Source of the DNA: Saccostrea cucullata
Taxonomy: Eukaryota
Assembly (NCBI RefSeq): GCF_032062105.1
Contig: NW_026924061.1
Location: 62,001 to 126,000, forward strand
DNA length: 64,000 nt
Reading direction: 5' to 3'
Shown here: piece after piece, positions 2,515 to 64,000 of the stretch
Layout: every line of letters starts with the position of its first letter
Numbering within the stretch: the first letter of the stretch is position 1
Notes under the pieces: model-generated
Told to the model about the DNA's origin: nothing
The model's input: the letters and a program-made list of their open reading frames with translations, nothing else
Databases searched by the model: none
Made by a program: the position numbers and the translations under genes

Positions 2515-3301
2515 ATGGCACTGGAAATCGTGGAACCTACCATACAAGAATGTTCTCATGAGGAGCGCAGGGAAGTAGAAGAACTTATGAAATGCTGCGC
2601 TGTAAAGGAAGCTACCCTGACCAACTCCCTTGCCCTCAAAACTTCCGGATGCAGAATTGCGAGAAAAGGTCCGAAAGCTTCTCTCGAATGACGATTATAG
2701 GAAAATATGCGAGTATGTCGATAAAGAAACATTTACGATGACGATTACGGGCTCTGAAGCAACCTTTGAGCGTGGAGGCAAAAGATTCCTTGACCCCATA
2801 CAACTTAACTCCATGGAATGCATTACAAATGCCAGTATTTACCAAATAGCTAGCATTTACATTGAAAGCATATTTCTGGTTCTAGGTGTCATTGGAATTA
2901 AACTAAGCTTTGATGAGGCCTTGATACACAAAATAATCAAAGAAATCATTCCAATCGTGGAGCAGCCCGCTTTCAGAAGAATCATAGATGAATTTGTTCA
3001 CAGCTGGATATCAGGAAATGCTTGGGGAAAGGCAAAGGCAATTTTCACTTTACTGAAAGACACCTATTCTTTTGGCATATTCTGGAAAGTTGTTAAAATC
3101 GCTTTTTCGGAAATGTCATGGATGGAACGAATCAAAAATCTCGTCCTGGTTGCCACGATGATTGTTGCTGCATTTGCAACAGACGGTATTGCCCTCATTG
3201 CCAGCATCTCTGTCAATGATGCATACAACCTTGCGAAAAAGATCATTAACATGACAAAATTGAAAGCTTTGGCCTCAGATCTTAAAAAAATAGGATGCTA
3301 G
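2515..3301 (+). pseudogene. Uncharacterised ~260-aa mostly helical protein with hydrophobic segments, split by a +1 frameshift near 2629 (pseudogene or sequence error)
   Basis: Splice-acceptor-like ttgtctttgtAG ends at 2491; ATG 2515 opens MALEIVEPTIQECSHEERREVEELMKCC..; the long 223-codon frame 2630-3301 starts at TTG with an in-frame TGA at 2618-2620, so the two frames join only by losing 1 nt around aactccCttg. Composition is coding-like against the AT-rich background. Confidence 0.65.
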
Positions 3302-4567: not shown

Positions 4568-5339
4568 GTGGAACCTACCATACAAGAATGTTCTCATGAG
4601 GAGCGCAGGGAAGTAGAAGAACTTATGAAATGCTGCGCTGTAAAGGAAGCTACCCTGACCAACTCCCTTGCCCTCAAAACTTCCGGATGCAGAATTGCGA
4701 GAAAAGGTCCGAAAGCTTCTCTCGAATGACGATTATAGGAAAATATGCGAGTATGTCGATAAAGAAACATTTACGATGACGATTACGGGCTCTGAAGCAA
4801 CCTTTGAGCGTGGAGGCAAAAGATTCCTTGACCCCATACAACTTAACTCCATGGAATGCATTACAAATGCCAGTATTTACCAAATAGCTAGCATTTACAT
4901 TGAAAGCATATTTCTGGTTCTAGGTGTCATTGGAATTAAACTAAGCTTTGATGAGGCCTTGATACACAAAATAATCAAAGAAATCATTCCAATCGTGGAG
5001 CAGCCCGCTTTCAGAAGAATCATAGATGAATTTGTTCACAGCTGGATATCAGGAAATGCTTGGGGAAAGGCAAAGGCAATTTTCACTTTACTGAAAGACA
5101 CCTATTCTTTTGGCATATTCTGGAAAGTTGTTAAAATCGCTTTTTCGGAAATGTCATGGATGGAACGAATCAAAAATCTCGTCCTGGTTGCCACGATGAT
5201 TGTTGCTGCATTTGCAACAGACGGTATTGCCCTCATTGCCAGCATCTCTGTCAATGATGCATACAACCTTGCGAAAAAGATCATTAACATGACAAAATTG
5301 AAAGCTTTGGCCTCAGATCTTAAAAAAATAGGATGCTAG
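4568..5339 (+). pseudogene. 5'-truncated duplicate of the 2515-3301 gene
   Basis: Matches 2530-3301 at offset 2038 with the same translation and same frameshift, but starts at gtggaacct, lacking the ATG and the upstream acceptor. Confidence 0.75.
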
Positions 5340-10543: not shown

Positions 10544-11607
10544 TCATTTTTTGCAGACACAGCTACTGTCAGTACATTTACAATTTTCAGGTCCGGTACA
10601 CCCCTTCCCACAACCGCAGGTTCCTGAAAATTTAAAAGAAAATTGCTTGAATTGATAAATATGCCATAAGTAACTAACAGCAAGAATTCTAACATACGCA
10701 AGTTATGAAGTATAACAAGTTATATAGCCAAATATTTGTAGGGCAATCAGTGGATTATAAGACACCACCCCTTCCCTCGAAATCATTTTAACTGTTTTGT
10801 TATGATATTTATGATAAAAGTGTCAGGAAAAAACTGATTTTAAGCACCCTTTTCAAAAATCGTTCAGCTTTTTTTTTTTTCTTTTATCCTTTTTACTTTT
10901 TTGTGCTTTCAAATATGGCTCTCTTTCCCAAATTTATATGAGTCAATTCAGTTGAGAACAATGATTCTCTAAATATGTCTGAAACAGTATAAATGTATAT
11001 GTACATGGTTTTTATACATACTAAGTATTCAGTGGCGAATCCAGGAATTTCGTAACTGGGGGGAGCAGTAGAAGGCAGGTGGTTTAGGGGGGGGGCTGCA
11101 ATGTAGCCCCCAGTGGTTCTAGGGCAAGGCCCTGGTGGGGGGTCCCAAAAGCTGACATACTTTTACAAATAAGAGATTTTTTTCTTTGATTTTAGGATAA
11201 CGGACAAATAAGTTTTACATACAAAAAATTCAAGGGGCGCATGCACCCCCGGCTTGCCGGCCCTGGATCCGCCTTTGGTATTTCTTTTTTTAAATAAACC
11301 TATGTACATGTATGTACATTCATGGATAAAGATATCAACTTACCGCTGCAGTTGCATTTGAGTTTACATCCGGGACATTTACAGCTGGGTCCACATTTAC
11401 AGGTGGATCCGCATTTACATCCACTTGAGGGGCAGGAATCTGCGCATTCGCACTTTCCAGCTAGAAAAAAAAATAAATTTTCATGTTTATCGAAGTATAA
11501 AGAGCGACAACTCGAACATATTACAAGGCTTGTTATCGGTAATATTTGATACACGTACAAGGAAATTGTCCCAACTTACTTTCTATGCAGTTGCAGGGGT
11601 CAGACAT
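10544..11607 (-). CDS. MT: Metallothionein MT-a (subtype A), 74 aa, 21 Cys
   Basis: Exons 11607-11580, 11460-11344, 10623-10544 with GT-AG sites; [74 protein letters not shown]; mollusc MT-I Cys pattern; AATAAA ~40 nt after the stop; non-coding exon donor ~11766. Confidence 0.95.
11030..11277. mobile_element. MITE in intron 2 of MT-a
   Basis: Ends cagtggcgaatccagg / cctggatccgcctttg; flanked by gtatt on both sides. Confidence 0.6.
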
Positions 11608-11881
11608 TTTTTTTTATCGTGTGTTTGCTGAAAGGAGAAAATGATGTTTGAAGCTATGATAATATTGGTACATTAGTCATGAAATTAATATTGATTTTTT
11701 TTCCATCAGTATCGTAAACATTGTAAAAATTCTATGTTCAATATAAAGAAAGAAAATACAACCTACCTTTTACTGTCGAGAATTGTATATTCCTTTTTAA
11801 AAGGAGTTCTTATGAGTATCACTCCCTTTGAATAAAGAATACAATATTACGTATATACACGTTATACAAATATTCAGCATC

Positions 11882-11923
11882 GTGTGCAAATAGCGATAGG
11901 TTGTATACACAGTATCGTGTGCA
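11882..11923 (-). promoter_or_regulatory. MRE pair of MT-a
   Basis: TGCACAC (MRE core TGCRCNC) at 11882-11888 and 11917-11923, just upstream of the non-coding exon. Confidence 0.85.
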
Positions 11924-12862
11924 AAATGTATAAATTTTAATATTTTTTTACAAAGTTGATAAGGGAATAACTACAGACTGTGGCATAAAACAGTAAATAT
12001 TTACTATAGCTTACATCAAACTTATCAATGTATAGCGTGTGACATAGAAAAAGGAATAAATGAATCTATTTTCAAGACTTTCCTATATTGTCAGCTTTGT
12101 CGATTATTTTTTTTTTTAAATATCGAAGTCACATTACGTGATGTTCTTGGCAGATATCCAAATTTGTATTTTAATCAGAGCTTTAGGTAATTGTGCAAAT
12201 GTACTTGTCACGAGATAGCTAAAGTATAAGATATGTACTAGTAACTGTAAAAGTACATGCGTAAATTGTAATATTTTCTCTCTCAATCTCTCAGGATAGA
12301 AATTAAAATGAAAATGTTGGAAATGGGTAAAATAAATTGTTTTAGAAAATGCATGATTTTTCAATATTTTTGTTGATTTGATAATTTTTCTGAAAAAATA
12401 TTGTGCATATATATAATTACGATTTTTCATAAAATGTTACTCAAAACATGATGCTTTATTTCTCGATCACTTCAAAACTTCACTTACATATAAAAATTGG
12501 TAATTATATCTAAGCTGTCATATGAAATTATTCTCCTAATAAATACTATACAGTTTCCTGACATTTGCGTTGGTTACGTATGTTAAATAAATGTTATTGA
12601 GAAGAAAGCCAGAAATGGGATTCAAAGAAAAACATATACGGAATCACAGTTCGGGGAAGTAAAACCTCGAAAACTTATTTTCACTTTTCAACACGGCACT
12701 ACTACAAAGTCATCAGTTAATTTGTGCCCCCATCCCCACCCCTCGCTTCTTAAATCTTTCTTAATGTATGTATTACCCGGATTCAAACAATAGACCCATA
12801 TATTTGACCCTATCAAACGCTTTCTACCTGCATCCTTTCACTCTTCAGGAGTGAACGGTCAC

Positions 12863-13273
12863 CAGGGGAGGATCCAATCTTTACCATTACAGGGGAGGAT
12901 CTAATCTCTACCATTACAGGGGAGGATCTAATCTCTAGCATTACAGGGGAGGATCTAATCTCTACCATTACAGGGGAGGATCTAATCTCTAGCATTACAG
13001 GGGAGGATCCAATCTCTAGGATTACAGGGGAGGATCTAATCTCTAGGATTACAGGGGAGGATCTAATCTCTACCATTACAGGGGAGGATCTAATCTCTAG
13101 CATTACAGGGGAGGATCTAATCTCTAGCATTACAGGGGAGGATCTAATCTCTAGGATTACAGGGGAGGATCTAATCTCTAGGATTACAGGGGAGGATCTA
13201 ATCTCTACCATTACAGGGGAGGATCTAATCTCTAGCATTACAGGGGAGGATCCAATCTCTAGTATTACAGGGG
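12863..13273. repeat. 27-bp minisatellite, ~15 copies
   Basis: Unit ttacaggggaggatctaatctcta(cc/gc/gg)a. Confidence 0.95.
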
Positions 13274-13522
13274 ATCCGATTTTTACGCCCTCTTCACAAG
13301 TATGTATTCTTTATAGATTTTTTAGATTCATCAGTTTTCTTTAACTTTCCCCGTTTTCATTAATTTGTAGCATATACTATTACATTATATGATGTATACA
13401 TGTAATATTATATTAAAGAAATATTTTCTCAAGTATAAGGAACAAAAAAAGAAACTCAATTTATGCTATATATTAGGCATTTTTGTTCCTTACAAGTGGA
13501 ATTCTATCATATAGCCATGAAG

Positions 13523-14462
13523 TCATTTCTTGCAGACACAGCTACTGTCAGGAGTGAGGTTTGCGAAAGCACAGGTTCCTGTAAATTACACAAAACATCA
13601 ACGGGAATGTAATACTGGTATCGTTTTCTTAAGTAAAAAGGAAACTAGTAAAAATATTAACAAATACATCGAATGATATACTAGTATTACTGTATGTAAC
13701 TAAAAATGAGGCCACCTAGCCTTTCAATAAACATTTTCAGTAGTAAAAAAATTTTATGGGGATAAAGTTGGTTGGGAGAACTTCCAGTTTGGTAGGGTGA
13801 TACTTTGGTGTCTGCATTTTTATCAAAATGTTGAATAGGATGCATGGCATAGATAGCAAGAAATATTAAGGAATGGCAAAATCAATGTGAAAAAAAGAAA
13901 ACCAGACACTGAACTTGTCAGTAAAAATTTTAATATTTCAATGCCATGAGTATGAGCTAGGAAGAATGATCAGGTTGGGAATCTTATATAAGAATATTTT
14001 AAAATTGATAAATAAAAATTATATATATGAGCTAGGAAGAATGATCAGGTTGGGAATCTTATATAAGAATGTTTTAAAATTGATAAATAAAAATTATATA
14101 GTTCCTTGATTGTTGTTTTTAATTCACAACAAACAGTGTCCAAGGCTTGATCATTAACAGAAAGAAACAAGCTGTAAAAGTTTCATAGTGTATATAAGAT
14201 GGTATTTCAGATGCTCTTGTATTTTACAACTAAGTTTTTAAAAAAAACATAGACCTACAGCGAAGATCTATAAAAAAAATTACCGTTCAGTTGCATTTAA
14301 CTTTACATCCGGGACATTTGCAGCTGCAGATATTTCCCGCCAAAATAATATTGTCCAAAAATTTCATACAGACAAGGAACAATAACTCTAACTATCTTGA
14401 ACCAATTCAAAATATTTCATAATACATATATTTCTTGCTAGACAGTTTCATGGATCAGACAT
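13523..14462 (-). pseudogene. MT: Metallothionein pseudogene (subtype B)
   Basis: Exon 1 (14462-14435) ATG TCT GAT CCA TGA has a stop at codon 5 and donor GT>GA; exon 2 remnant (~14339-14284) has acceptor AG>GG, a ~60-nt deletion and a stop; exon 3 (13578-13523) is 24 nt short (TCAFANLTPDSSCVCKK). Confidence 0.9.
13951..14100. repeat. 75-bp tandem duplication
   Basis: tatgagctaggaagaatgatcagg...aaattatata occurs twice with one substitution. Confidence 0.9.
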
Positions 14463-14850
14463 CGTTCTCTATCACTGATGTATCCTGAAATTATAGAATA
14501 CAAATAAAAATTATACAATACAAATTTTAAAAAATCAAATACATATGGAAAATTTAGAATACAAATAAAAATTCTACAATGCAAGTGAAAAATTTTACAA
14601 TGCAAATGAAAAATTATGCAATACAAATGGAGAATTATACAATGTAAATAAGAATAGAAAAGATCGAACACATGCCATATAAATACACAGGAACACTCAA
14701 GTTTTAAAAAGAGAGTTAATTGTTCAAAGTTGTCCGCAGTAAGGTATGTATCCGGTACATGGTTAACTCATCCTATACAAAATATGGGTTCAAAATGTAT
14801 AGGGTCCACACAAATGGTGATTCGGGGAAGACTATAGACTGTATAGCATA

Positions 14851-15232
14851 NNNNNNNNNNNNNNNNNNNNNNNNNNNNNNNNNNNNNNNNNNNNNNNNNN
14901 NNNNNNNNNNNNNNNNNNNNNNNNNNNNNNNNNNNNNNNNNNNNNNNNNNNNNNNNNNNNNNNNNNNNNNNNNNNNNNNNNNNNNNNNNNNNNNNNNNNN
15001 NNNNNNNNNNNNNNNNNNNNNNNNNNNNNNNNNNNNNNNNNNNNNNNNNNNNNNNNNNNNNNNNNNNNNNNNNNNNNNNNNNNNNNNNNNNNNNNNNNNN
15101 NNNNNNNNNNNNNNNNNNNNNNNNNNNNNNNNNNNNNNNNNNNNNNNNNNNNNNNNNNNNNNNNNNNNNNNNNNNNNNNNNNNNNNNNNNNNNNNNNNNN
15201 NNNNNNNNNNNNNNNNNNNNNNNNNNNNNNNN
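14851..15232. other. Assembly gap (382 N)
   Basis: Run of N. Confidence 1.
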
Positions 15233-15900
15233 ACTAGAGTAAGATAGTTTTTGTAACAAGACATAATGTTCTTTCAGTATTCGTAAATATATTTATGTAA
15301 AATATTATTTTCAGTACGATATTGTGTACTGTGATTTCCTTTGATTTTTTTTTCTTCAGATTTTCCCTAGATTTCTCTTAAAGCTTTTGAGGCTTATTTA
15401 CATTTCTGACATTTAATTTGGTGATATTTAAAAAAAAAAACGGTTTTGAGCAAAATCTCAGACAATTCTAAATTTTAAAGAAATATAATTATTTGGAATC
15501 ACGGTTTGATGAGATAAAACCGTGGACACCGATTCTTACTACGGCTTAAAACTGCTAAAGAATTACCAGTTTATCTGTGCCCCCCTCGCATCCCTTTGCG
15601 GGGAATCGAGTTCGTATTCCCCCTAAGAATGTTAGATCCTATTAATTAAATTATTATACCTATTTCTGAAATTGACCCTATTAATTATTTCCTACCTTGT
15701 TTCACACATTGGATGTGATTGGTAAACTATAGGGGGATACTAACTCCTCCTAGGCACCTGATCCCACCTCTCTGATTTCCACAAGTCCGTGTTTTATACC
15801 CCCTTAACAGATTTGTATAATTGTTTATAGATTGTTGAGATTGCTCACTGTTTGTTAGCTTCCCTTTTTTATTATATCATACGCTATATAATATCATGTA

Positions 15901-16501
15901 AGGGGTGTTAAGAAAGTTCGTTCCTTGATGAAATATTTTCAAAAATTTCAAAGTATAGTGCTTAACTAAAGAGATGAATTTTCTAGTATGAAAAAAATCA
16001 CAAGACTGTGCTTTAGATTTATAGGAATTCATTTCAAGCAGGAAGCTATAGGATATTTCTTCCGAATGAATATATACATAACATCTTTAAAGCACCCGAA
16101 TGATAGAAATGCTAGTCATTTTGAGTAAAAATAAAGAATTGTTCTTGCATCACACAAGCTGGTGAGCGTAGATATAAGAACGATAGATCATTTTCAAAAG
16201 AATAGGTTTGTCATTTTCTCATTCTTCACCGACTTAATAATTTTTGTATAGTACTAGTATTTGAAAGGATGTTTTGACTAATAAATGTCACAAATATGCG
16301 TCACCCCTGATTTTTCTGCACAGACATCATCTGTTTTAATGTCTGCCCTCCCCCTATTGATTCAACAAAAGACAATGAAAACTTTATCAGTAGCCAGAAT
16401 GGACTCTATAAACATGAAATATAACACATTGTAAATATTTTCTCGTCATATTTTTTATCGAAAATAAAAGAAAAATGTGGAATGAACTTTCTTAACACCC
16501 T
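15901..16501. mobile_element. TA-flanked MITE (Tc1/mariner-type ends)
   Basis: TIRs ag(g)ggtgttaagaaagttc / gaactttcttaacaccct with TA on both sides; right part repeated at ~21557-21688. Confidence 0.7.
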
Positions 16502-16669
16502 TAATATAATAATATGATAATATTTTCTCGTCAAGTCTATACGTGTACTGTCGTAAAACAAAGTATAAGGAGCTTAAAGAAAAAAAAGTCAAGAAACACT
16601 TCATCTATGGTAAAATATGCATTTATTATATAGTTCTTTATAATTGAATTCTGTCACATGGCCAGGCAG

Positions 16670-18072
16670 TCATGTTTTGCAGACACAGCTACTGTCAGTA
16701 CATTTACAGGACTGGGGTCCAATGCATCCCTTTGCGCAAGCACAGATTCCTGTAAATAAAAAAAATGCTAGACATGAAATATCCTGCATGTTTATAGTGA
16801 AAGGTGCAGCCAAAAAAAATTAAAGCTTAACACCCCCACTCCAAAGAAAAAACTTTGAATTTAAAAAAAACAATGTAAAAGAAAACTATCCAGAATTCAA
16901 AATCCTAATCCTAGTAATCCTGAGTGGGAGGGGGTGTTATTAACAATAAAATCCTATATATAAATATGTTTCTACATTATGGAGAGAAAAATTAATAGAC
17001 GTAATAACGCCAAAATGGCGTAATAACGCGAAAAAAGCATCATTACGTCTTTTCAAAAGACGATAAAATTCATCAAAATGCATTTTTTACGCTTTTTGGA
17101 AAGGCCTTGGCAGGCCCGTTCATTTGAAGTTACTGAGGAGTGAGGGGTCCGAAAAAATTGACAAGCAAGCAAAAAGCAGACAGGCTATTCTCTCCTTACT
17201 TGGCCTTTCCAAAAGGCGTTGTTATGCCTTATAATTTTTTTTCTCTGTAAATTGATTCTAATAGGCTTTAGTTCCAACCAGACTTTCAATAAACACTTCG
17301 CGTTTCAAGAGGAAAAAGTTATGCTCGGAAAAAGTGGCGTAAGGGGCTTCCCCCTCCCTAGTACTTCGTGCCTGCATTTTTATCTAATTGTTGAATATGA
17401 TCTAAGTGATTCTCAATCAGCAAGAAATATTTAGTAAATAAAAATGAGAAGGAAAAAATAATAGCGACAAAACTATGTTTGGCATAATCAATGTAAATAA
17501 AAGAAAACACACCCCCTACAAACAATATTATTTTGTTTTTAATGTTTTGGTTTTTTAATGTTATGTATACCAAAAGAACACATGATCTGAGTCTCCTAGA
17601 AAATATTTGGAAGGCACTTATCATAATTGTTTGTGGGTTTGTTTGTTTCAAAAAATTTGAAATACTACCCCTGCCAAAATTTGAATAATCTTTTCAACTA
17701 GAAGAAAACACTTATATGTCTGATAGAGAAATAGAGGTAGTAGTACAAAGCAGTAGGTATTTTAGATGAATATTCATTTTTCCAAAGTGTATGAAAATAT
17801 CCCCCTACCATTACAGTTGCAATTCACTTTACATCCGGGACATTTACAGCTGGATCCACATTTACACCCGCCCCCACATTTACAGCCACTTGATGGACAC
17901 GGGTCTGCGCACAGACATTTGCTGGCTGAAAGAAAATTTAAATCAATTCATTTCATGCGGACAAGGATCGATAACTCTAACAGCATTGAACCAATTAAAT
18001 GGGGCAAAATACATGTAGAACCAATTCAAAATAGAGTAACTTACTTGCTAGACAGTCGCATGGATCAGACAT
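16670..18072 (-). CDS. MT: Metallothionein MT-b (subtype B), 74 aa, intact ORF but promoter deleted
   Basis: Exons 18072-18045, 17925-17809, 16749-16670; MSDPCDCLATSKCLCADPCPSSGCKCGGGCKCGSSCKCPGCKVNCNCNGICACAKGCIGPQSCKCTDSSCVCKT. Confidence 0.9.
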
Positions 18073-18731
18073 TTTTGTTTATTTATGATGTTTTCTGGAA
18101 AAGTTATTTAAGTGCCTGAAGACATTGTAAAACAAACAAGTATACTGTTATACATGTATGTGCATTCATGTGGTAAAATACAACTGCAATATTTCATATA
18201 TACATGTAAAGGCTTATATGTATTTATGCCAAAAGTTTGCATGCAGGGATACAATGTACAAGCATTTTTTATACAGTGTTTTTAAAGTGTTTCTTCAGAC
18301 CTGTTAGGCTCAAGATATTGTATTTATGATTTCTAATTTAGAAAAAGAAAATCAAAATTCATACTTGTTCTGGTCATAGATATCATAAACAATGAATAAT
18401 TGAATAAATTACTTGCGGAAAATCACTCTACATTGCATTTTTATACATTTGTACTAGTTTGTTAGAAAATAGTACCAAATGCATACACAACTGCCCTTAA
18501 AGTGATATTTACAATATATATATTTTTTTTAACCAACACGTACTTCATACTTAATCACATTTAAATTTATATGTTGGAGTGGGGAGTCATAATTATTTGG
18601 GGGATTCTGTGAGCTACATGACCACCATTCCCTTCAAGAAAAACAAATAAATAAAGAAACCCTCCATTTACGATATATTATGCAATTATTATTTTGTTCT
18701 TCACATAGAATTCTCTCAAGTGACCAGGGAG

Positions 18732-19522
18732 TCATTTCTTGCAGGCACAGCTATTTTCGGTATATTTACAGGACTATGGTCCGGTGCATCCCTTTGTGCA
18801 AGCGCTGGTGCCTGTAAATTTAAATTTTAAAAAATATATATATTGATTGATGAGGATGTCTTGAAGTATTTAACAAGAAGACATATACATTATATTATTA
18901 TATTTACATTCATTGTATACATGTATATTCAAATAAATGCAATGCAACACAATACAACGACACCAGCCTCACCACACGCCTTCCCCAGGAATTTTTAGTT
19001 CTCTGTAATGCATTTCTGCAAAAAAAGCTAGAAATTTTGGCTTTCCTCTCTTAAAAAATGCTAGGCAATGATTTTTGTTTGTGCGTTTGTTTGCTTTTGA
19101 AATTTCAACTGTAAAATTGACATCCCCTAAATTTGATCAGGGTGTGTATCTCAGACTTTAATTGAGAACTTGAGGTACTGTGTGTTTTGTTGCCCCCCCC
19201 CTTTTGTAATACAGGGTGTTGTCTGAGGAAGAGAAAATTATTTTTTTTAAATACAATGATATTAATGAGAAAAATAATTAATTTCCTACTCATTTTTTTC
19301 ATCATACAAACAGTATTGTAAATCCCCTCCAGTTCTAAGTAAATAGAAAATAAGAACTTAAAAAGTGTATATTAATTATTCCTTGTACAAAGAAGCGCTA
19401 AGTATTTTCTCACAACTATATATAGAATAAAATATGAATACACACACATGTATAGAAACGTTATACAAATTTTCAGAATCGTGTGCAAAAATTGATAAGT
19501 TGTATATACAGTACCGTGTGCA
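18732..19522 (-). pseudogene. MT: MT relic unit 1: last exon plus promoter, coding exons 1-2 absent
   Basis: Exon-3 homolog 18811-18732 with internal TAG and two Cys losses; MREs at 19481-19487 and 19516-19522. Confidence 0.85.
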
Positions 19523-20500
19523 AAATGTATAGGTTCAAAAATAGAATGTAAACATTTACGTAGAAATATAAATATCTTACTGTGATCTTGGCAAATGGCC
19601 ATACATACAATCTAATGTATATACATGTACAGTTTATATATATATCATTGTGTGCTTTTAGTTTTATTGTTCGGACTTAATGCAAAATATGAATGATGAA
19701 CTGGTGTTTGATTTAAGCATGTTTTATTGAAACATAATCAATGGAATTTTTGAAAGTTTATTAATCTTAAATTGTCCTATGTAACACAAACAAATGACAA
19801 AAACATATACATGTACTTTACCGTGCGTCGATTGTGTTATATTATTATTATTCCATGCATCAATTTATTTTATTCTCTGCTTGCGAAGAGTCATTGTTTC
19901 CCCGGAGGGGGTAAACACTCTGAAAATCCCGGAGCAGACCCCCCCCCCCCCCCGCACACACACACACACATCGGCTTCCCCTTCGAAATATGTATGCTCC
20001 CTGTGTCTCTTTGCGGGGGAGGGAATTCACTTTGCTTATTAAGTATTTTACAACATTCGGACTCCCTCTCCAAGCATGCATTATCCATTTAAATTAAATC
20101 TAAATCTTTCATCCGCTCCAATCCCGTGTATAATAAGTCTTGTTGATGTCAATATCAAATACTAGTAATTGATTGTGCGACATCCCTCTACATTTTATAC
20201 AACTGCACTAGTTTACTAGTAAATAAATGCATGCATCACAACCCATCAAAGTGAGAGACTGAGAGCTACAATGTTTATATCAATTTAATTTCACATACAA
20301 GCACTTCATATTTATTCACATTTAAATTTATATGTAGGATTGGGGATTCATAATTATTTTTGGGGATTTTTGGAGCTACATGGCCAGCATTCCCTACAAG
20401 ATAAACAAATAAATAAACAAAACCCATTTATGATACGAGTATAAATTATGCATTTCTTGTTTTGATCTTTACAATGGAATTCTGTCACTGGACCAAACAG

Positions 20501-21266
20501 TCATTTTTTGCAGACACAGCTACTGTCGGTACATGTACAGGACTGTGGTCCGATGCAACCTATTGCGCAAGCGCATGTGCCTGTAAATTCAACAACAACA
20601 AAAAATAAAATATTTTTACTGAGTGATTAGGGTATCTTAAAGTATTTAACAAGAAGACATATACATTATATATATGCATTCATTGTATAAAAACTAGTGT
20701 AGGCAATCAAATAAATGCAATGTGACACAACGCAACAACGCCAGACACAGCACGCCCCTTCCCCAGCAATTTTTATTACTCTAATTATCATTTGTGCCAT
20801 AAAGCTTGAATTTTTGGGTTTCCTGAAAAAAAAATGCTAGTCAATGATTTTTGTTTGTGCTTTTGTTTGGTTTTAACATTTCAACTGTAAAAATACAAAC
20901 CCCCTCCCCCCAAATTTGAACAGGGTGTGTCTCCCAGACCTCCATTAATTGAGAACTTGATGCACTGTAAGTTTTGCTGTCCCCTCCTTTTGTATTACAG
21001 GGTATTGTCTGAAGAGGAGAAAATGATTTATTTTTTTAACACACTGATAATAATGAAAGAAAAATTATTTTCTCCTCATTTTTTCATCATACAAACAGTA
21101 TCGTAAATCCCCTCTGCTTCTAAGTATAGTAAATTAAACTTAAAAGTGTATGATTATTCCTTGTACAAAGAAGCGCTAAGGATTTTCTCACCACTCGAAT
21201 ATATAGAATATAATATGAATATACACATGTATAGAAACGTTACACAAATTTTCAGAATCGTGTGCA
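20501..21266 (-). pseudogene. MT: MT relic unit 2: intact last exon plus truncated promoter
   Basis: Exon 20580-20501 GTCACAIGCIGPQSCTCTDSSCVCKK* with intact acceptor; one MRE at 21260-21266. Confidence 0.85.
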
Positions 21267-21854
21267 AAATTGATAAGTTGTGTATATGAACAAAATGCAT
21301 TTAGAGTCAATTGAATAACATAATTTCTAAAGATCATGCTAGTTTACTTCGGGGAAAGAAAGAATAATCCACAGATCTGCTATTAGCATAACAGCTTACA
21401 TATATAACAATGTCACTTAAACACGATTTATTGTTATTGGAATATACCTGAAATTGGACTATTATTTGTTTCCTGATACAGAACAGTTAAACATGATTTT
21501 TTGGTATTTTTCTACACCTCAAAAACTGATAAATACAAAAACAATCCTGTATTTTCGCACCCGAATGATAGAAATGCTCCAGTAGCAAGAATGAGCTCTA
21601 TACACATGAAATACCACAAATTGTAAATATCTTATATTTTTCTTCGAAAATAAAAGAAAAATGTGGGATGAACTTTCTTAACACCCTTTATATAATAATA
21701 TGATAATATTTTCTCGTCAAGTCTATACGTGTATTGTCGTAAAAAAGTATAAGGAGCTTAAAGAAAAAAAAAATAAAGAAACACTCCATCTATGGTAAAA
21801 TATGCATTTATTATACAGTTCTTTATAATTGAATTCTGTCACGTGGCCAGGCAG

Positions 21855-23259
21855 TCATGTTTTGCAGACACAGCTACTGTCAGTGCATTTACAGGACTGG
21901 GGTCCAATGCATCCCTTTGCACATGCACAGATTCCTGTAAATAAAAATTGCTAGACATGAAATATCGTGTTTTAAGTGAAAGGTGCAGCCAAAAAAAATT
22001 AAAGCTTAACATCCCCTCCCAAAGAAAAAACTTTGAACTTTATAAAAAAAAAACATTGAAAAGGAAAACTATCCAGAATTCAAAATCCTAATCCTAGTAA
22101 TCCTGAGTGAGGCAGGGGGAGGGGGTGTTATTAACAATAAAATCCTATAAATATGTTTCTGCGTTATGGAGAGAAATATTAATAGACGTAAGAACGCCTT
22201 TTGAAAAAGGCGTAATAACACCAAAATGGCGTAATAACGCGAAAAAAAGCATCATTACCTCTTTTCAAAAAGCGATAAAATTCATTAAAATGCATTTTTT
22301 GCGCTTTTTGGAAAGGCCTTGGCAGGCCCGTTCATTTGAAGTTACTGATGGGGGAGGGGTCCCAAAAAATTGACAAGCAAGCAAAAAGCTATTCACTCCT
22401 TACTACGCCTTTCCAAAAGGCGTTATTATGCCTTATAATTTTTTTCTCCGTAGATTGATTCTAATAGGCTTTAGTTCCAACCAAACTTTCAATAAACACT
22501 TCGCGTTTCAAGAGGAAAAAGTTATGCTCGGAAAAAGTGGCGTAAGCCCCCCCCCCCCAGTACTTCGTGCCTGCATTTTAATCTAATCGTTAAATATGAT
22601 CTAAGTGATTCTCACTCAGCAAGAAATATTCAGTTAATAAAAATGCGAAGGAAAAAATAATAGCGACAAAAATATGTTTTGAATAATTAATGTAAAGAAA
22701 ACACACACCCTACAAACAATATTATTTTGTTTTTAATGTTTTGGTTTTTTTAATGTTATGTACCAACAAGAACACATGATCTGAGTCTCCTAGAAAATAT
22801 TCGGTAGGTACTTATCATAATTGTTTGTGGGTTTGTTTGTTTCAAAAAATTTGGAGAACTATCCCTGCCAAAATTTGAATAATCTTTTCAACTAGAAGAA
22901 AACACATAGGTCTGATAGAGAAATAGAGGTAGTAGTACCATGCAGTAGGTATTTTAAATGAATATTCATTTTTCCAAAGTGTATGAAAATATCAACCTAC
23001 CATTACAGTTGCAATTCACTTTACATCCGGGACATTTACAGCTGGATCCACATTTACATCCGCCCCCACATTTACAGCCACTTGATGGACACGAGTCTGC
23101 GCACATACATTTGCTGGCTGAAAGAAAATTTTAAATCAATTCATTTCATACGGACAAGGATCGACAACTCTAACAGCATTGAACCAATTAAATGGGGCAA
23201 AATAGAACCAATTCAAAATAGAGTAACTTACTTGCTAGACAGTCGCATGGATCAGACAT
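21855..23259 (-). CDS. MT: Metallothionein MT-c (subtype B), 74 aa
   Basis: Exons 23259-23232, 23117-23001, 21934-21855; MSDPCDCLATSKCMCADSCPSSGCKCGGGCKCGSSCKCPGCKVNCNCNGICACAKGCIGPQSCKCTDSSCVCKT; non-coding exon donor 23460. Confidence 0.95.
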
Positions 23260-23548
23260 TTTTGTTTATTTATGATGTTTTCTGGAAAAGAGAATAAAAC
23301 TTTTTCACAAAAAAGAAAAACTTTCTAATTTTTGACAAATTTAATTTTGACTATAATTAATTTTTTTTTCAAAATCGCCAAAGAATTCTATTATTTTGTT
23401 TCTTTTTTTTTCTTTATTTTTTTTTAAACTTATTTATTTATTTATACGATATACACATACCTTCTTAATATGAATTGCTAAAATTCCTTGCACAGAAGGC
23501 CTTGTTAAAACGTAGATTGAATAAAGAATACACGAAGCACAAGCCCAC

Positions 23549-23843
23549 TTTATACATTACACATTTGGTATCGTGTGCAAGCCATTAAAGTCACGAGATG
23601 TATACATATACTAAGTAGCGTGTGCAAAAAATGTATAGGGTTCAATTATAATGGGATTCAAAATAAACAAAGCATAAGCGCACTTTATACATTATAGATT
23701 TAGTATCGTGTGCAAACCATCATGAGATGTATATTGAGTAGCGTGTGCAAGAAATGTATAGGGTTCAATTATATCAGAGTAGGGGATTTAAAATATCGCT
23801 TGAGATACCAGTATACAATTGATTGTATATTTAATTTGCACAC
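23549..23843 (-). promoter_or_regulatory. MT-c promoter with duplicated TATA+MRE cassette
   Basis: TATAAA at 23549-23554 and 23684-23689; TGCACAC at 23573, 23620, 23708, 23743 and on the opposite strand at 23837. Confidence 0.85.
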
Positions 23844-24213
23844 GGCACTATAGGTATACAATGTGTAAATTCCAACTGATGATTATTCATAGCGAGAATA
23901 CGGCAGTTATTTAAGTGCCTGAAGACATTGTAAAATAAACAAGTATACCGCTGTACATGTACGTGCATTCATGCGGTAAAATACAACTGCAATATTTCTT
24001 ATATACATGTGTAGGTTTATATGTATTTATGCTGAAAGTTTGCATGCAGGGATAAAATGTACAGGGGGAGTCATAATTATTTGGGGGATAATGTGAGCTA
24101 CATGACCATTATTCCTCTCAAGAAAAACAAATTAAAAAACCCTCCATTTACGATTATATTATGCAATTATTATTTTATTCTTAACAGTGGAATTCTCTTA
24201 TGTGACCAGGGAG

Positions 24214-25004
24214 TCATTTCTTGCAGACACAGCTACTGTCGTTGCATTTACAAGATTGTGGTCCGGTACATCCCTTTGCGTAAGCGCAAGTTCCTGTAAA
24301 TTTGAATTAAAAAAAAATATATTGATTGATGAGGATGTCTTGAAGTATTTAACAAGAAGGCATATACATTATATTATTATATTTGTATTCTTTGTATACA
24401 TGTATATTCGAATAAATGCAATGCAACAAAACACAACGACACCACCCTCACCAAACGCCTTCCTCAGGAATTTTTAGTTCTCTATAATGCATTTGTGCAA
24501 AAAAAAAAGCTAGAAATTTTGGCTTTCCTGGGAAAAAAATGCTAGGCAATGATTTTTGTTTGTGCATTTGTTTGCTTTAAAAATTTCAACTGTGAAAATG
24601 ACACCCCCTAAAATTTGATCAGGGTGTGTATCTCAGACTTTAATTGAGAACTTGAGGTACTGTGTGTTTTGTTGCCCCCCCCCCCCTCTTTTGTATTACA
24701 GGGTGTTGTCTGAAGAAGAGAAAATGATTTTTTTTAAAATATGATAACAATGAGAAAAATTATTAATTTTCTCCTCATTTTTTTAATCATACAAACAGTA
24801 TTGTAAATCCCCTCTGCTTCTAAGTAAATAGTAAATTAGAACTTTAAAAGTGTATATTAATTATTCCTTGTACAAAGAAGCGCTAAGGATTTTCTCACCA
24901 CTATATATAGAATAAAATATGAATATACATATGTATAGAAACGTTATACAAGTTTTCAGAATCGTGTGCGAAATTGATAAGTTGTATATACAGTACCGTG
25001 TGCA
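24214..25004 (-). pseudogene. MT: MT relic unit 3: last exon plus promoter
   Basis: Exon 24293-24214 GTCAYAKGCTGPQSCKCNDSSCVCKK* (one Cys>Tyr); proximal MRE mutated (CGCACAC, 24964), distal intact at 24998-25004. Confidence 0.85.
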
Positions 25005-26347
25005 AAATGTATAGGGTCAAAAATAGAGTGTAAACAATTACGTAGAAGCATATCTTACTGTGTTCTTGGCAAATGTCCATATATATATACATGTAATCTA
25101 ATGTATATACATGTACAGTTTATATATATCATTGTGTACTTCTAGTTTGAATGTTCGGACTTAATGCAAAATATAAATGATGAACTGGTGTTTGATTTAA
25201 GCATGTTTTATTGAAACATAATCAATAGGATTGTTGAAAGCTATTCCATCTTAAATTGTCATCTCCGACACAAACAAATGACAAAAAACATACAAATAAA
25301 CGTGTTATGAGGGTGTAAAATATACTTTACCGTGCGTCAATTGTGTTATATTATTATTATTCCATGCATCAATTTATATTATTCTCTCTCTCGATCGATC
25401 GATGGAATTAATTATAGGAAAAGAGTACCGCTGTGCTGCATGCTTTCAATTATAAGAGATTTCACGGTTTTTCAAGAGTCCGTTTAATTATATTTTTTAA
25501 TTTTCCCCGAAGATATTTCACTATGATTTCCTGTGATAAATTCTTATCTTCAGTACATGTAGCACTAGACTTCTAGTATAGCTCTGCACCCTCCTCTTGC
25601 GCGGATCCAGGAACTTTTTCAATGAAGGGGCGTGTATTAAACACCCACTTAAAAAACAAAACTCAGGAATTATTTAAAATTTCACAAACAGAAAAATCTT
25701 TCTCAAAGGCAAAAAAAACTTTTTGGTGTGAAGTCGTTTTTCTTTGATTTTTCTGACTTTTCTAATAACCTTACGAAGAGGGGGTAACCACTTTAAAAAT
25801 CCCGGGGGCAGACGCCCCCCCCCCTCGGCTTCCCCTTCGAAATATGCATACGCCCCGTGTCTCTTTGCGGGGGAGGGAATTCACTTTGCTTATTAAGTCT
25901 TCCACAATATTCGGACTCCTTCCCCAAGCATGTTTTATCCATTTAAATTAAATCAAAGTCTTTGATCTGCTCCAACCCCGCGTATAATAAGTCCATGCTG
26001 TTGATGTCAATATTAAATAGGGGCCTAATTAACTGTGCGACATATCCCTTTACATTTTTTATACAACTGTACTAGTTTACTAGTAAATAAATGCATGCAT
26101 TACAACCCATCAAAGTGAAGGACTGAGAGCTACAATGTTTATATTATTTTAATTTCACATACAAGTACTTCATATTTATTCACATTTAAATTTATATGTA
26201 GGAATAGGGATTCATAAGTATTTGGGGGATTTTCGGAGCTACATGACCTGCATTCCCTACAAGATAAACAAATAAATAAACAAAACCCATTTACGATACT
26301 AGTATAAATTATGCATTTATTGTTTTGATCTTTACAATGGAATTCTG

Positions 26348-53282: not shown

Positions 53283-54077
53283 TCATTTTTTGCAGACACA
53301 GCTACTGTCGGTACATTTACAACTTTCAGGTCCCGTGCAGCCCTTTCCACAACCACAGGTTCCTGCAAATTTCACAAAACAGTTTTATGTAATTGATGAA
53401 TAAGTCCTAATTAACTTTTAAAAGATAATAAAGAATATAAAAGGGAAATAAATTATGAATAAATGAAGTCAAAATATATGTAAGTAATCAGTAAAAAAAA
53501 AAAAGACCTCCAAAAGTAAAACCTTTGAGTTTTAAAATTTTGAAAGTGTAATGATAAATATCATTAAGAAAAAGTCTTGTTTTCAAATGTTCTTTTAAAA
53601 GGTTGAGATGAATTTTTTTTGTTTTGTGCCGTTAAAAAAAAATTGGGCACAGCGTGCCTCCTCATACAAGTACATTGAACTTGAGTCTGATGTAGATACA
53701 ATGTTTTTGTTTTTGTTTTTGTTGTTTTTTTTTTAATGAATATAAGGTATTTTAAATGACAAATTTTCTTTCTGACATTTAAATGCATATCTTTGGGCAA
53801 ACGACTTACCGCTGCAATTGCATTTGACTTGACATCCGGGACATTTACAGCTGGGGCCACATTTACAGGTGGGTCCGCATTTACAACCACTTGAGGGACA
53901 GGAATCTGCGCACAGACATTTCCCGGCTAGAAACGGAGAAAATGAGCATACTATAATTATATGTAAATCGACGTATGAAGAGCGACAACTCGAAACTTTC
54001 AAATGGCCAAATCATTGGTATTTGGTACAAGGAAATTCATATAACTTACTTTCTGAGCAGTTGCAGGGGTCAGACAT
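53283..54077 (-). CDS. MT: Metallothionein MT-h (subtype A), 74 aa
   Basis: Exons 54077-54050, 53926-53810, 53362-53283; [74 protein letters not shown]. Confidence 0.95.
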
Positions 54078-57796: not shown

Positions 57797-58310
57797 TCAC
57801 TTTTTGCAGCAACAGTCATTTGCGCATTTGCAAGATTCAGGTGCGGTGCAGCCTTGTCCACAGGCGCAATTACCCGCTAAAAAAGATAAAGCATTTTTAT
57901 TATTTTCTTGTTTCTTTTACTAATCCTGCATTATAAATGTTACTTTACAAGTTAAATCCTTAGCTTATTTTATATATACAAAAATTGGAAATTCGTATGC
58001 TTTTAACTCATTTTTAACCATATGTCATATATTTAAAATTAAACAGTCAATCAAATCATTCCATTCAAACTTACCGGTGCAGCTGCATTTCACTTGACAT
58101 CCGGTGCACTTGCACCCGGGTCCACACTTACATCCGGATCCACATTTACATCCGCTACGTGGACAGGTTTCCCCGCACTCACATTTTCCAGCTGTAAATA
58201 GTCAAAGATCGATAACTCTAATAATTTTCATGATACAGATAGAAACTGCGTTGTTTAATAAAATGCGCAAATCATTACTTACTTTCTAAGCAATTGCAGG
58301 GATCAGACAT
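57797..58310 (-). CDS. MT: Metallothionein MT-i (subtype C), 74 aa, 22 Cys with C-terminal CCC
   Basis: Exons 58310-58283, 58191-58075, 57876-57797; [74 protein letters not shown]; non-coding exon donor 58529. Confidence 0.93.
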
Positions 58311-60530: not shown

Positions 60531-62045
60531 ATTACTATAATCTTAATATAATTTTCTTTATTTTTTTATCTCTTACTACCATCCTTCATCTACACATTCC
60601 TGCTCATTAAAAAATCACCTTTAAATCCGACACATCACCTTTCTATATACCAGGATATAATATTTATAGGAGTATTGGATGTTAGAATTTGCATCTGCCT
60701 CAGATTTCAAGGCAAAGTAAGCAAAATATAATTTTTAAAACCTTATTCATGAGTTTTTATTTCATCGAGGTAATGAAAAAATAAAGCCTTAACAACTGCA
60801 TGGAAAATCCTCAATGTGTACATTCTAACTTCACCACAAATAATAATAATTTTGACAAACTGTATTTGAAGTGTGAACAGATTATCATATTCATGTATGT
60901 TTTTGTTGATTTCTTATTTTACTGAAAGTCAATTCTGGATTTGAGATTTTGTTTTTAGAATTTAATATTATATGCTTGTATATTACCACGTGGTATCGAA
61001 AACTTATGTAACACGAGAAATTATAAACACATATACTTGACAAATGTATACTTTAAAGAAAATGAGTAACCCATTACACATATTATCATTTTATTATTAA
61101 ACTGTCGACAACCGAGTGAAAAACCACAAAGTGCTTGTCATTTTTAGCATGATTACAAAACTATACAATGTTATTGTCAATTTTTTGTTATATACTAGCA
61201 CTGTACCTATAAATTTGGTTCATATATATATAATCTTTACTAAAATGACAGGTATTTTTAAAGTTAAATTAAAGCGGTCATGAAAAGTAAACGTTTTACC
61301 ACTGAGTGGGATACTAGAGACTTTTTTCCACGTTGTATCATACTGATATTATAATTTAGCGGACGAGTTGTCAAATACATGTATTCATACACACACTATT
61401 TCTGTTGGCCACACAAAGTCTTACCCCCTGCTCACCAACAGTTATTTCGCTAAAATGTCAATTAAATTTCTACAAGTTACCAATTTTTGTTTCCCTTATA
61501 CATGTACAGCGTATACAATAATTTCTCTGCTAAAAGTGTCCACTCAAACCTTTAGAAAATTCCTCTATGTGTATGTTCAGTGGCAGAACAAACTCTTCCC
61601 AGGATTCTTGCTCTTTGGTTTTGATGTTTGTTTGATAAATGAAATTAATTTAGTTTTCGTGAAGTCTCAGTCATATATGGTGTAAATTTTGAATATATAC
61701 CAGATGGCAGTAAATTCAAAATTTAAAACACCGCATCTCCATAACTTAGTTGACATAAAACTGAAGCACAGAAAAGGTTTTAAGAAATTTATTCAAGAAA
61801 ATCATATCGAACACGTTCAACTTGACAAAAAGGAGGTATATTGTTTGATAGATCACAGAATTAATAACAATATTAATATTGACTTTTATACTAATATTTT
61901 TTTTTAGAAAATATACACACAAAAACCAATGTCGCGATCATCCGTTGAATTGGCACCCATAGGTTATTTTTATTATTTTTTTTTTTAACTTTTTTTTTTG
62001 CAGAAAAAAGTCTTGACCTTCCTACTTCTTAACTCCCCCATGACG

Positions 62046-63137
62046 TCACTTTTTGCAGCTACTGCAGTCGGCTTTTTCACATTTGCCAGTCTCAGTGTTC
62101 TGACAACAATCCTTTGTACCTAAAAGATTTACATTGTAACTTTTAATTGCATCTTATTTTAGTATTTGCCTTTTCTACAGAACATACATTTACAATCAAA
62201 CCTTTTGATGCTTCGATTTTGAGGTTTTCGAGGATATAGGAGATACCGAGCTCCAATATAATATATTATGTGAAAATGTGATTGAAATAAACTGCCAAAC
62301 CACTTCGAACTATCACTGGTTTCGAGACACAGATATGTGATTTAATACTACTATGTAAAATGCATATAAACAAAATGTGAATTTGTATAATGAACAAGTT
62401 TCGTACTTTTTTATGTACATGCAGAAGTTGAATATTCCAAGAATATGGGACCTTTTTTTTCAACGATCAATAAAAATTCTCAAAGTGAACTTTTTTTCAT
62501 TTGAATTGTTTTCAATAGAAGTTGAAACAAATAAACCCCCGTGTGACTCCGTATTAGGATTCTTACCAGCACAGCAGGCTTTGGTGGGACGCTTACAGTT
62601 GCCACATTTACAGATTCCGCCCGGTTCTGTACAATTACAACCAGGCCCGCACCTACAGGATCCACCCGCAGGTTTCTCTTCTAAAATTAAACAAGAGAGT
62701 TTTTTGGTAAGCATTGTTATAGTACATGAACAGAGAAATAGACATTGAACTTTTATGATAAATGGTACATGTTCTTGCAACTCAAATTAGAAAATGGAAT
62801 ATGTACTTTAGATGAGGGTAATCGTTATTTGTTTGATGAATTTTGGTCTTCGTTGCTTTTAAAATTATTTCCTCTTTTAATTGACATGTTAACCAATGAA
62901 TAGCGTCTCCATCCAAGTTAATATTTTTGGAGATTTTAAACTTAAAAAGGGTAGGTAAGGTTTGGTATATTTTTCGAAATGATGTGTACTAAGAGAGATA
63001 ACTCTAAAATATATATAATTTACAAAAAGAGTTACCCGAACATAAGAAATAATATTGCTATTTTGGATTTAATTTCATGGGTTATAAATAGATGGACACT
63101 TACTTTCACAGCATTTGATCTCTCCTTGGTCAGACAT
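62046..63137 (-). CDS. Divergent metallothionein-like protein MT-j, 73 aa, 16 Cys with CC doublets
   Basis: Exons 63137-63104, 62680-62567, 62119-62046, all GT-AG and phase 1 like the neighbours; MSDQGEIKCCEKEKPAGGSCRCGPGCNCTEPGGICKCGNCKRPTKACCAGTKDCCQNTETGKCEKADCSSCKK; acceptor 2 nt before ATG and non-coding exon donor at 63285. Confidence 0.85.
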
Positions 63138-63350
63138 TTCTACAAAAGACTATCTAGAATTAGAAGAAAAAAAATATTTTACGTTTTCTAAATAAAAATG
63201 ACGCTATTTCATAAAATAATAAAAACATTCTAAAAACTCAACTGAAATTTAATTCTAAAATCTAAATATTATTTTATGTTTTACCTCTATCGATATCTCT
63301 TACGAATCTGCACAGTCCCCTTGTTTACCGCCGAGATGAAACTTGTTTAC

Positions 63351-63406
63351 TTATAATATACAGGGAAAGTTACTTTTTTTTTCTTAAATTTTTTTATCCG
63401 TGTGCA
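63351..63406 (-). promoter_or_regulatory. TATA-like box and single MRE of MT-j
   Basis: TATTATAA ~63351-63358; TGCACAC at 63400-63406. Confidence 0.7.
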
Positions 63407-64000
63407 AATGAATAGAATGTTGTATTTGGTGAAATTGCGGCGTAGAAATATTAAGCATCTACTTGTACAGTACTTTGTGAATAGTAAATTAACAAATGGT
63501 TAATTGTTTTTTTTAATATCGGATCACTCGCTAAAGTTCAAACTCATACTAGTAAATAAATACTTTGTCCCTTTAATTTTTCTTGTACAATAATTAATGT
63601 AGAGATTGAATCGAGGTCTAATTTAATTATCAATTTATGGAAGTGAATCTAGAAGTAACACAGAGGAACCCTGCTGAATATTAGGGGGAAAAGCCTATTC
63701 ATACATATGCAGATAAGATACTGGTATTTGATTTACAAAAAAATGTGACTGACTTAATTGGCGGTGTTTCAAATTCAGGGGCGGATCAATAATCTCATTG
63801 TATGTTACAGGGTATGGTTTTATATACTGGACGACATACCGGTATAATAACGCCTTCTTTAGTTCTTTAGGTACGTTCGTGTATACTGTGAAATACTGAA
63901 CATAAGGATACCAAAAATCAAAACATTTCCTCGGAAAAGACCATATCGGTCGTGAGATACATTATTACTTGTTTACTTCCGTTACGCACATACTTACACC

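What the first reader, a model, noticed from the sequence alone, without database searches (positions are those of the whole stretch)
62046..63406. Divergent 16-Cys metallothionein-like gene with a rewired Cys pattern at the head of the cluster
Seen: a clean three-exon ORF, only partly visible in the ORF track, with the same strand, phase-1 introns, non-coding first exon, MSD start, CKK end, MRE and intron motif as the neighbours. Its Cys layout is CC-x9-CxC-x3-CxC-x6-CxC-x2-C-x6-CC-x5-CC-x7-C-x4-C-x2-C (16 Cys vs 21) and it is rich in Glu/Lys/Thr. Known: oyster MT-I is 21-Cys alpha/beta, MT-III is beta/beta, and MT-IV is Cys-richer with doublets and triplets; as I recall them none matches this. 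Inference: a separate MT subfamily with a 9-Cys N-terminal and 7-Cys C-terminal cluster, possibly with different metal stoichiometry or preference.
Basis: partly seen in the sequence, partly recalled or inferred. Interest (0 to 1): 0.85.

Follow-up and report, generated by a model that had tools for sequence, protein, structure and literature searches.

The report
Oyster metallothionein with rearranged cysteines
At the head of a rock oyster's cluster of metal-binding (metallothionein) genes sits an intact, much-changed copy whose 16 cysteines follow none of the published mollusc patterns, so it probably holds fewer or different metal ions, though neither expression nor metal binding has been shown.

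Summary
The gene is real as described: minus strand, coding exons 63137-63104, 62680-62567 and 62119-62046, GT-AG phase-1 introns, 73 aa, 16 Cys. The organism is Saccostrea cucullata (a neighbour equals XP_062603816.1). It is single-copy and first in a tandem cluster of at least 12 alpha/beta1 metallothionein genes. It shares their extended MRE word (27 copies in the cluster, none in the 104 kb beyond) and an intron-1 word. Neutral decay to this divergence kept all coding features in 0 of 4000 simulations, so it was under purifying selection. It meets no strict mollusc domain motif (Calatayud 2021). The 7-Cys C-terminal part is undescribed, and its ancestry is ambiguous (beta1 by DNA, alpha head by protein). 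I predict 5-6 Zn/Cd versus 7. No ortholog, RNA read or metal data could be obtained; database blanks are uninformative because canonical neighbours were mostly missed too. Cys-depleted MT domains have precedents (FcaMT2, Biomphalaria, Oikopleura t-12C). The scan showed no earlier report of this gene on other DNA. Verdict: new variant of a known kind, moderate interest.

The parts
63399..63408 (-). Metal-response element (core TGCACAC 63406-63400) in the extended word shared by the cluster's promoters; single copy here, 269 nt before the ATG
63351..63360 (-). TATA-like box about 40 nt downstream of the MRE (inferred)
   Evidence: sequence; similar MRE-TATA spacing in neighbours
63284..63335 (-). 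Putative non-coding first exon and its donor (GT at 63303 or 63284); boundaries not established
   Evidence: sequence; by analogy with neighbours, no reads
63104..63137 (-). Coding exon 1 (34 nt; MSD start, first CC pair; phase-1 donor GTAAGT)
62997..63007 (-). Intron-1 word TTAGAGTTATC shared with intron 1 of at least five neighbours
62567..62680 (-). Coding exon 2 (114 nt; three CxC pairs, one single Cys, 6-residue linker, CC pair; donor GTAAGA)
62046..62119 (-). Coding exon 3 (74 nt; CC-x7-C-x4-C-x2-C-KK, stop TGA)
61969..61974 (-). AATAAA polyadenylation signal 72 nt after the stop (second one 253 nt after)
57797..58310 (-). Context: adjacent 22-Cys alpha/beta1 gene ending in CCC-KK; its exon 3 is the closest DNA relative of exon 3 of the finding
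10544..54077 (-). Context: rest of the tandem alpha/beta1 metallothionein cluster in the window (seven more complete-looking genes plus partial units)

Best explanation
A functional, long-diverged paralog of the oyster alpha/beta1 metallothioneins, made by tandem duplication at the cluster edge. SHOWN: intact gene, same exon count and phases as the neighbours, shared MRE word and intron word, purifying selection. INFERRED: relative to the 12-Cys alpha domain it lost the middle CxC-x3-C block (5' part of exon 2), leaving nine Cys in beta2 order, which should form an M3S9 cluster; the C-terminal part kept seven Cys, with CxC pairs turned into CC and two pairs broken into singles, and should hold 2-3 divalent ions, probably only together with the first domain. 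The protein is a cytosolic chelator (no signal peptide, no aromatic or His residues) holding about 5-6 Zn/Cd instead of 7, with a more labile C-terminal site, possibly helped by extra Glu. It is transcribed under MTF-1 through one MRE, probably less inducibly than neighbours with 2-3 MREs; a buffering or metal-donor role is more likely than bulk Cd sequestration.
For: Model and pattern. Exon 2 matches neighbours' exon 2 and exon 3 their exon 3 at DNA level against codon shuffles (p down to <0.0005 and 0.0005), while exon 3 does not match their exon 2. Codon-aligned DNA identity is only 44-63% and introns do not align, yet neutral evolution to d = 0.5 left an open frame in <=0.1%, >=16 Cys in 0/4000 and no F/W/Y/H in 0/4000 runs. 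Promoter and intron words. Nearest ESM Atlas clusters with a family name are metallothioneins, at lead-level scores of 0.83-0.86. Nine-Cys domains bind three divalent ions (PMC7826182); a 7-Cys trimmed domain binds three but needs its partner (PMC8283569).
Against: No RNA run was listed, so expression and junctions are unverified. No ortholog was found. No metal data exist. Metal preference cannot be read from Cys pattern (PMC7826182). Exon 3 also matches the neighbours' N-terminal 25 residues strongly at protein level, so the simple collinear history may be wrong for that exon. Snail MTs with Cys-poor C-termini are poorly selective and not Cd-inducible (PMC11101346).
Confidence: 0.62

Rival explanations
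1. It is a fast-evolving member of an already named oyster lineage (MT-IV, or less likely MT-III), not a separate kind. CC-x5-CC across intron 2 would be the remains of MT-IV's cysteine triplets (CxC to CCC to xCC).
For: Exon 3 is closest to the 58k and 33k genes (62-63% DNA identity vs 44-55%), and the 58k gene ends in CCC-KK. From memory only, not tested: Crassostrea MT-IV has two triplets four residues apart at this junction with a similar spacer. A triplet-type last exon was not found elsewhere in the assembly with a pattern recalled from memory. Both halves end in C-x2-C like MT-III domains (Table 1).
Against: 16 Cys and no triplet; strict beta2 and MT-III C-terminal motifs are not met; no internal repeat signal between the two halves (p 0.24 protein, 0.41 DNA); the exon-3 tree placement has 44% support and the exon-2 tree does not group it with the 58k/33k genes.
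Confidence: 0.2
2. Same function as the best explanation but another ancestry for the C-terminal part: exon 3 is a second, truncated copy of the alpha-domain head, or a chimera of alpha head (5' part) and beta1 end (3' part), rather than a worn beta1 domain. Not exclusive of the best explanation's function.
For: Exon 3 peptide aligns with residues 3-25 of canonical neighbours with 14 identities in 23 columns; with Cys positions fixed, p < 1/5000 for five of eight neighbours, DNA p 0.001-0.1. Alpha-repeat MTs exist in oysters (MT-II).
Against: The matching stretch spans intron 1 in the neighbours, so an intron loss or cDNA-mediated step is needed. DNA similarity to exon 3 of the 58k gene is as strong (p < 1/5000), and terminal position, phase and the CKK-TGA-C ending are those of beta1 exons. 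MT domains share short motifs, so convergence is possible.
Confidence: 0.35
3. A recently silenced or decaying paralog: once functional, now not expressed.
For: The cluster has other broken or partial units; single MRE; weaker exon-2 donor; no reads.
Against: Long neutral decay is excluded; start, stop, four splice sites, MRE, intron word and poly(A) signal are all intact; every exon length change relative to neighbours is a multiple of three.
Confidence: 0.08
4. The real mRNA uses another in-frame donor in exon 2 (62596 or 62656), giving a shorter protein (63 aa, 14 Cys for 62596), so the stated pattern is partly wrong.
For: Both cryptic phase-1 donors are in frame; a small family-trained matrix scores 62656 at 6.6, 62566 at 5.8 and 62596 at 4.4.
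Against: Only 62566 has G at -1 plus GTAAG; it puts a Cys pair just before the donor as in all neighbours; the 58k gene also carries a perfect exonic GTAAGT from Cys-Lys codons.
Confidence: 0.07

Closest known systems
Oyster MT-I (alpha/beta1, 21 Cys), e.g. S. cucullata XP_062603816.1
   Same: Same cluster, strand, three coding exons with phase-1 introns, MSD...CKK ends, MRE word, 73-74 aa, no aromatic residues.
   Different: 16 vs 21 Cys; alpha and beta1 motifs not met; three CC pairs; only 44-63% DNA identity in alignable codons.
Mollusc beta2 domain and oyster MT-III (beta2/beta2); beta2/beta1 MTs of Scaphopoda, Monoplacophora, Solenogastres (PMC7826182)
   Same: N-terminal nine Cys in the order four pairs plus one single, ending C-x2-C; 6-residue linker as in Solenogastres beta2/beta1.
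   Different: First pair is CC not CxC; loops x9 and x6 instead of x5 and x4; second half has 7 Cys and fits neither beta1 nor beta2. The paper's hypothesis that beta2 is an alpha domain trimmed in the middle matches what the exon-2 alignment shows here.
Oyster MT-IV (details from memory; the paper notes only gain or loss of Cys in CgiMTIV)
   Same: Adjacent cysteines around the exon 2/3 junction; nearest DNA relative in the cluster ends in CCC-KK.
   Different: MT-IV is Cys-richer and has triplets; this gene is Cys-poorer and has none. No MT-IV sequence could be fetched for a test.
Patellogastropod gamma domain (CCx5CCx4CCx6CCx7CC)
   Same: Begins with CC-x5-CC like the C-terminal part here.
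   Different: Gamma has five CC pairs, is N-terminal and limited to limpets; motif not met. Convergent at most.
Cys-depleted MT domains: Falcidens FcaMT2 delta-like (9 of 14 Cys), Biomphalaria/Lymnaea C-terminal tails, Oikopleura t-12C (7 Cys)
   Same: Show that MT domains lose cysteines and stay in use; t-12C binds three divalent ions but needs its neighbour domain.
   Different: Unrelated patterns and lineages; none has both halves rearranged with CxC to CC shifts.

Membership tests
Metallothionein superfamily | Small, Cys-rich (about 15-30%) protein with CxC/CC motifs and no aromatic residues | tested here: met
   73 aa, 21.9% Cys, no F/W/Y/H; criteria from PMC7826182
Metallothionein superfamily | Forms metal-thiolate clusters with Zn, Cd or Cu | not testable with these tools
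   Needs recombinant protein, ICP-AES and ESI-MS
Metallothionein superfamily | Match to a Pfam metallothionein model | tested here: inconclusive
   No hit for the exons, but the full canonical neighbour P0001 has no hit either
Metallothionein superfamily | MRE in the promoter, metal-inducible transcription | tested here: inconclusive
   MRE present and cluster-specific; induction not testable, no RNA run listed
Oyster MT gene cluster (paralogy) | Same exon structure, phases, regulatory words and exon-to-exon similarity | tested here: met
MT-I (alpha/beta1) | 12-Cys alpha motif | tested here: not met
   neighbours pass as positive control
MT-I (alpha/beta1) | 9-Cys C-terminal beta1 motif | tested here: not met
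beta2 domain / MT-III | Order of four Cys pairs plus one single Cys | tested here: met
   N-terminal order PPPPs; definition
beta2 domain / MT-III | All pairs CxC with x5, x3, x4, x2 spacing | tested here: not met
   CC first pair, x9 and x6 loops
beta2 domain / MT-III | Second 9-Cys beta2 domain | tested here: not met
   7 Cys, order PPsss; no internal repeat signal
MT-IV | More than 21 Cys with CCC triplets (definition from memory) | tested here: not met
   16 Cys, no triplet
MT-IV | Orthology to Crassostrea MT-IV by phylogeny and synteny | not testable with these tools
   No MT-IV sequence or other oyster genome could be fetched
gamma domain | Five CC pairs | tested here: not met

The most novel reading that the evidence does not exclude
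The gene represents an unrecognised oyster-wide metallothionein subfamily: an independently derived beta2-order N-terminal domain joined to a new 7-Cys CC-CC-C-C-C domain that folds into a defined cluster with its own metal preference (for example Zn donor or Cu(I) binder). It would be a seventh mollusc MT domain type and a traceable case of the proposed alpha-to-beta2 trimming.
Probability: 0.28. Interest if true: 0.62.

Novelty: new variant of a known kind. Interest (0 to 1): 0.42.

Why it matters
Oysters accumulate very high Zn, Cu and Cd, and MT transcripts are used as pollution biomarkers; a paralog this divergent would be missed by MT-I primers and by standard homology searches. For MT evolution it offers a case where a 9-Cys beta2-order domain sits collinearly beside 12-Cys alpha paralogs, which makes the 'alpha trimmed in the middle' hypothesis (PMC7826182) testable, and a small 7-Cys domain for testing how Cys spacing sets cluster stoichiometry. 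It stays within a well-known protein class and does not change what MTs do.

Tried and rejected
The joined 73-aa protein was not sent to any search, as the operators' note requires; all searches were exon by exon, by reference, and joined translations were made only inside local scripts to count and compare residues. Exon-2 homologue searches were blank, but the control with a canonical neighbour's exon 2 was blank too, and a four-sequence profile found only one bivalve MT, so the blanks show little. Pfam missed even the full canonical protein and PF00131 found nothing in the genome. PDB sequence hits (HiPIP E 0.59, a scorpion peptide E 1.8) are chance; no signal peptide, so a secreted disulfide peptide was rejected. 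The AlphaFold model of exon 2 alone (pTM 0.32) and its fold search were uninformative. ESM Atlas gave nothing for exon 3. Metagenome scan: none. No RNA run was listed. No hidden in-frame exon in either intron. Degenerate Cys patterns over the genome were too unspecific or showed only the cluster; no MT-III locus was identified, which does not show absence. [quoted passage not shown] The N stretch at 14851-15232 was left alone.

Full report
Observation. The minus strand carries three coding exons, 63137-63104 (34 nt), 62680-62567 (114 nt) and 62119-62046 (74 nt), with GT-AG introns of 423 and 447 nt, both phase 1. Neither intron hides an in-frame exon. With matrices trained on the neighbours, the two acceptors are the best two in the locus and the first donor is the best donor; the second donor is weaker than the neighbours' and has two in-frame competitors inside exon 2. 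A non-coding first exon is likely by analogy but not shown. The composition claim holds for Glu, weakly for Lys, not for Thr.

Setting. A profile of neighbour exons retrieved one protein, XP_062603816.1 of Saccostrea cucullata, on a contig of the same length as ours; it equals my model of the 11.6-kb gene at 74/74 residues. This identifies the organism and validates the neighbours' 28+117+80-nt architecture. The contig holds at least 12 canonical exon-2 copies, all on the minus strand, and four more lie on other contigs. The neighbours I modelled are 74-aa alpha/beta1 proteins with 21 Cys, one with 22. The finding is the first gene of the array; no further Cys-rich exon follows in 104 kb, and a filamin gene starts about 15 kb away on the other strand. 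It is single-copy in the assembly.

It is a true paralog. The extended MRE word TTTGCACACG occurs 27 times on the contig, all within the cluster, including once at 63408-63399. The word TTAGAGTTATC lies in intron 1 of this gene and of five neighbours; it is five-fold enriched genome-wide but still expected only about 5e-4 times per intron and strand. Against codon shuffles, exon 2 matches neighbours' exon 2 (p < 0.0005 to 0.047) and exon 3 their exon 3 (p 0.0005 to 0.045) but not their exon 2. Exon 2 also shows weaker similarity to neighbours' exon 3, as expected from motifs shared between MT domains.

It is not a long-dead copy. Codon-aligned identity to neighbours is 44-63%, branch lengths are 0.7-1.1 substitutions per site, and introns do not align. 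Simulated neutral evolution of neighbours to a similar alignment score (d about 0.5) kept an open frame in at most 0.1% of runs, 16 or more Cys in 0 of 4000 and freedom from F/W/Y/H in 0 of 4000 (the simulation uses assumed mutation and indel rates). Very recent silencing cannot be excluded, since no RNA run was listed.

What changed. Anchored on the introns, the alpha domain lost its middle CxC-x3-C block at the 5' end of exon 2, the first pair became CC, and one loop grew from 3 to 6 residues. The result, four pairs and a single Cys, is the order that defines the beta2 domain; PMC7826182 proposes that beta2 arose by just such trimming of alpha. The strict beta2 spacing is not met, nor is any alpha, beta1, beta3, gamma or delta motif, while neighbours pass alpha and beta1. 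The C-terminal seven Cys (CC-x5-CC-x7-C-x4-C-x2-C) match nothing in that catalogue of 272 mollusc MTs as summarised in the text; its supplementary alignments are not held. Their origin is unresolved. DNA, position, phase and the CKK-TGA-C ending point to the beta1 exon of the adjacent 58k/33k-type genes (p < 1/5000 for the 58k gene with Cys fixed), but the peptide also matches the neighbours' first 25 residues (14 identities in 23 columns, p < 1/5000 for five of eight), a stretch that spans their intron 1. A chimeric exon or convergence on a shared turn motif are both possible. From memory, MT-IV has two CCC triplets at the exon 2/3 junction, which would be a natural step from CxC to CC; I could not fetch MT-IV to test this.

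How it most likely works. By established MT chemistry, a 9-Cys domain binds three divalent ions, and the 7-Cys trimmed domain of Oikopleura binds three but gives mixed species unless paired with its neighbour (PMC8283569). I therefore expect 5-6 Zn/Cd per molecule against 7 for alpha/beta1, with a more labile C-terminal site. The 9+7 split rests on intron-anchored homology and the six-residue Cys-free linker; it is an inference. One MRE against two or three suggests weaker MTF-1 induction (inference). Metal preference depends on non-ligand residues and cannot be predicted. Snail MTs with Cys-poor C-termini are unselective and poorly inducible (PMC11101346), which is a realistic outcome here.

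Novelty. No relative was found, but the searches were shown to be insensitive for these proteins, the joined protein was not searched, and the main oyster MT papers are not held. I found no description of this pattern in the literature I could read. Degenerate MT domains are known elsewhere. The finding is a real, intact, unusual variant of a well-known family; subfamily status and altered metal binding remain hypotheses. Interest 0.42.

Noticed in passing
window 27262-26351, 25005-24217, 21267-20504, 19523-18730 (minus strand): MRE-bearing promoters followed by a last exon without coding exons 1-2, within tandem 5.2-kb duplications; the 18.8-kb exon has an in-frame stop. Could be partial duplicates or alternative last exons of the 23k and 18k genes (the scan's note s1-711042 describes the same).
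   Followed up: partly
window 14462-14391 (minus strand): An exon 1 with TGA at codon 5 and no GT at the usual donor, still carrying a one-mismatch copy of the intron word: a probable pseudogene beside the N stretch, which was left unread.
   Followed up: no
window 35386-30182, and L018-L021 on four other contigs: A distinct MT type (starts MPAT, two extra residues in the alpha domain, long introns) with four close copies dispersed outside the cluster, each with a similar MRE pair upstream; groups with the 58k gene (99% bootstrap, exon 2).
   Followed up: partly
window 58310-57797: 22-Cys gene ending in CCC-KK with a 4-residue spacer at the exon 2/3 junction; a candidate for the MT-IV lineage in Saccostrea (from memory of MT-IV).
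   Followed up: partly
window 63007, 58221, 50201, 39241, 33115, 17980; genome-wide: The word TTAGAGTTATC is kept in intron 1 of many cluster genes and is five-fold enriched genome-wide (2519 vs 496 for the reversed control): a possible transcription-factor site or repeat-derived element.
   Followed up: partly
contig C6198 about 140-206 kb (L003, L030-L035): Filamin gene (CH domain, Pfam E 3e-16) head-to-head with the MT cluster; a useful synteny anchor for finding orthologs. Exons that look like a cytochrome P450 follow near 217-219 kb (by eye, not tested).
   Followed up: partly
window 2621-3298 and 4659-5336 (plus strand): Two identical 226-codon open frames inside a 2-kb tandem repeat, with diverged copies elsewhere on the contig; no Pfam hit.
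   Followed up: partly
L017 (contig 31.1 kb): An MT exon 2 with two Cys replaced (Tyr, Trp) and an altered last exon: a decaying copy, a useful contrast to the intact finding.
   Followed up: no
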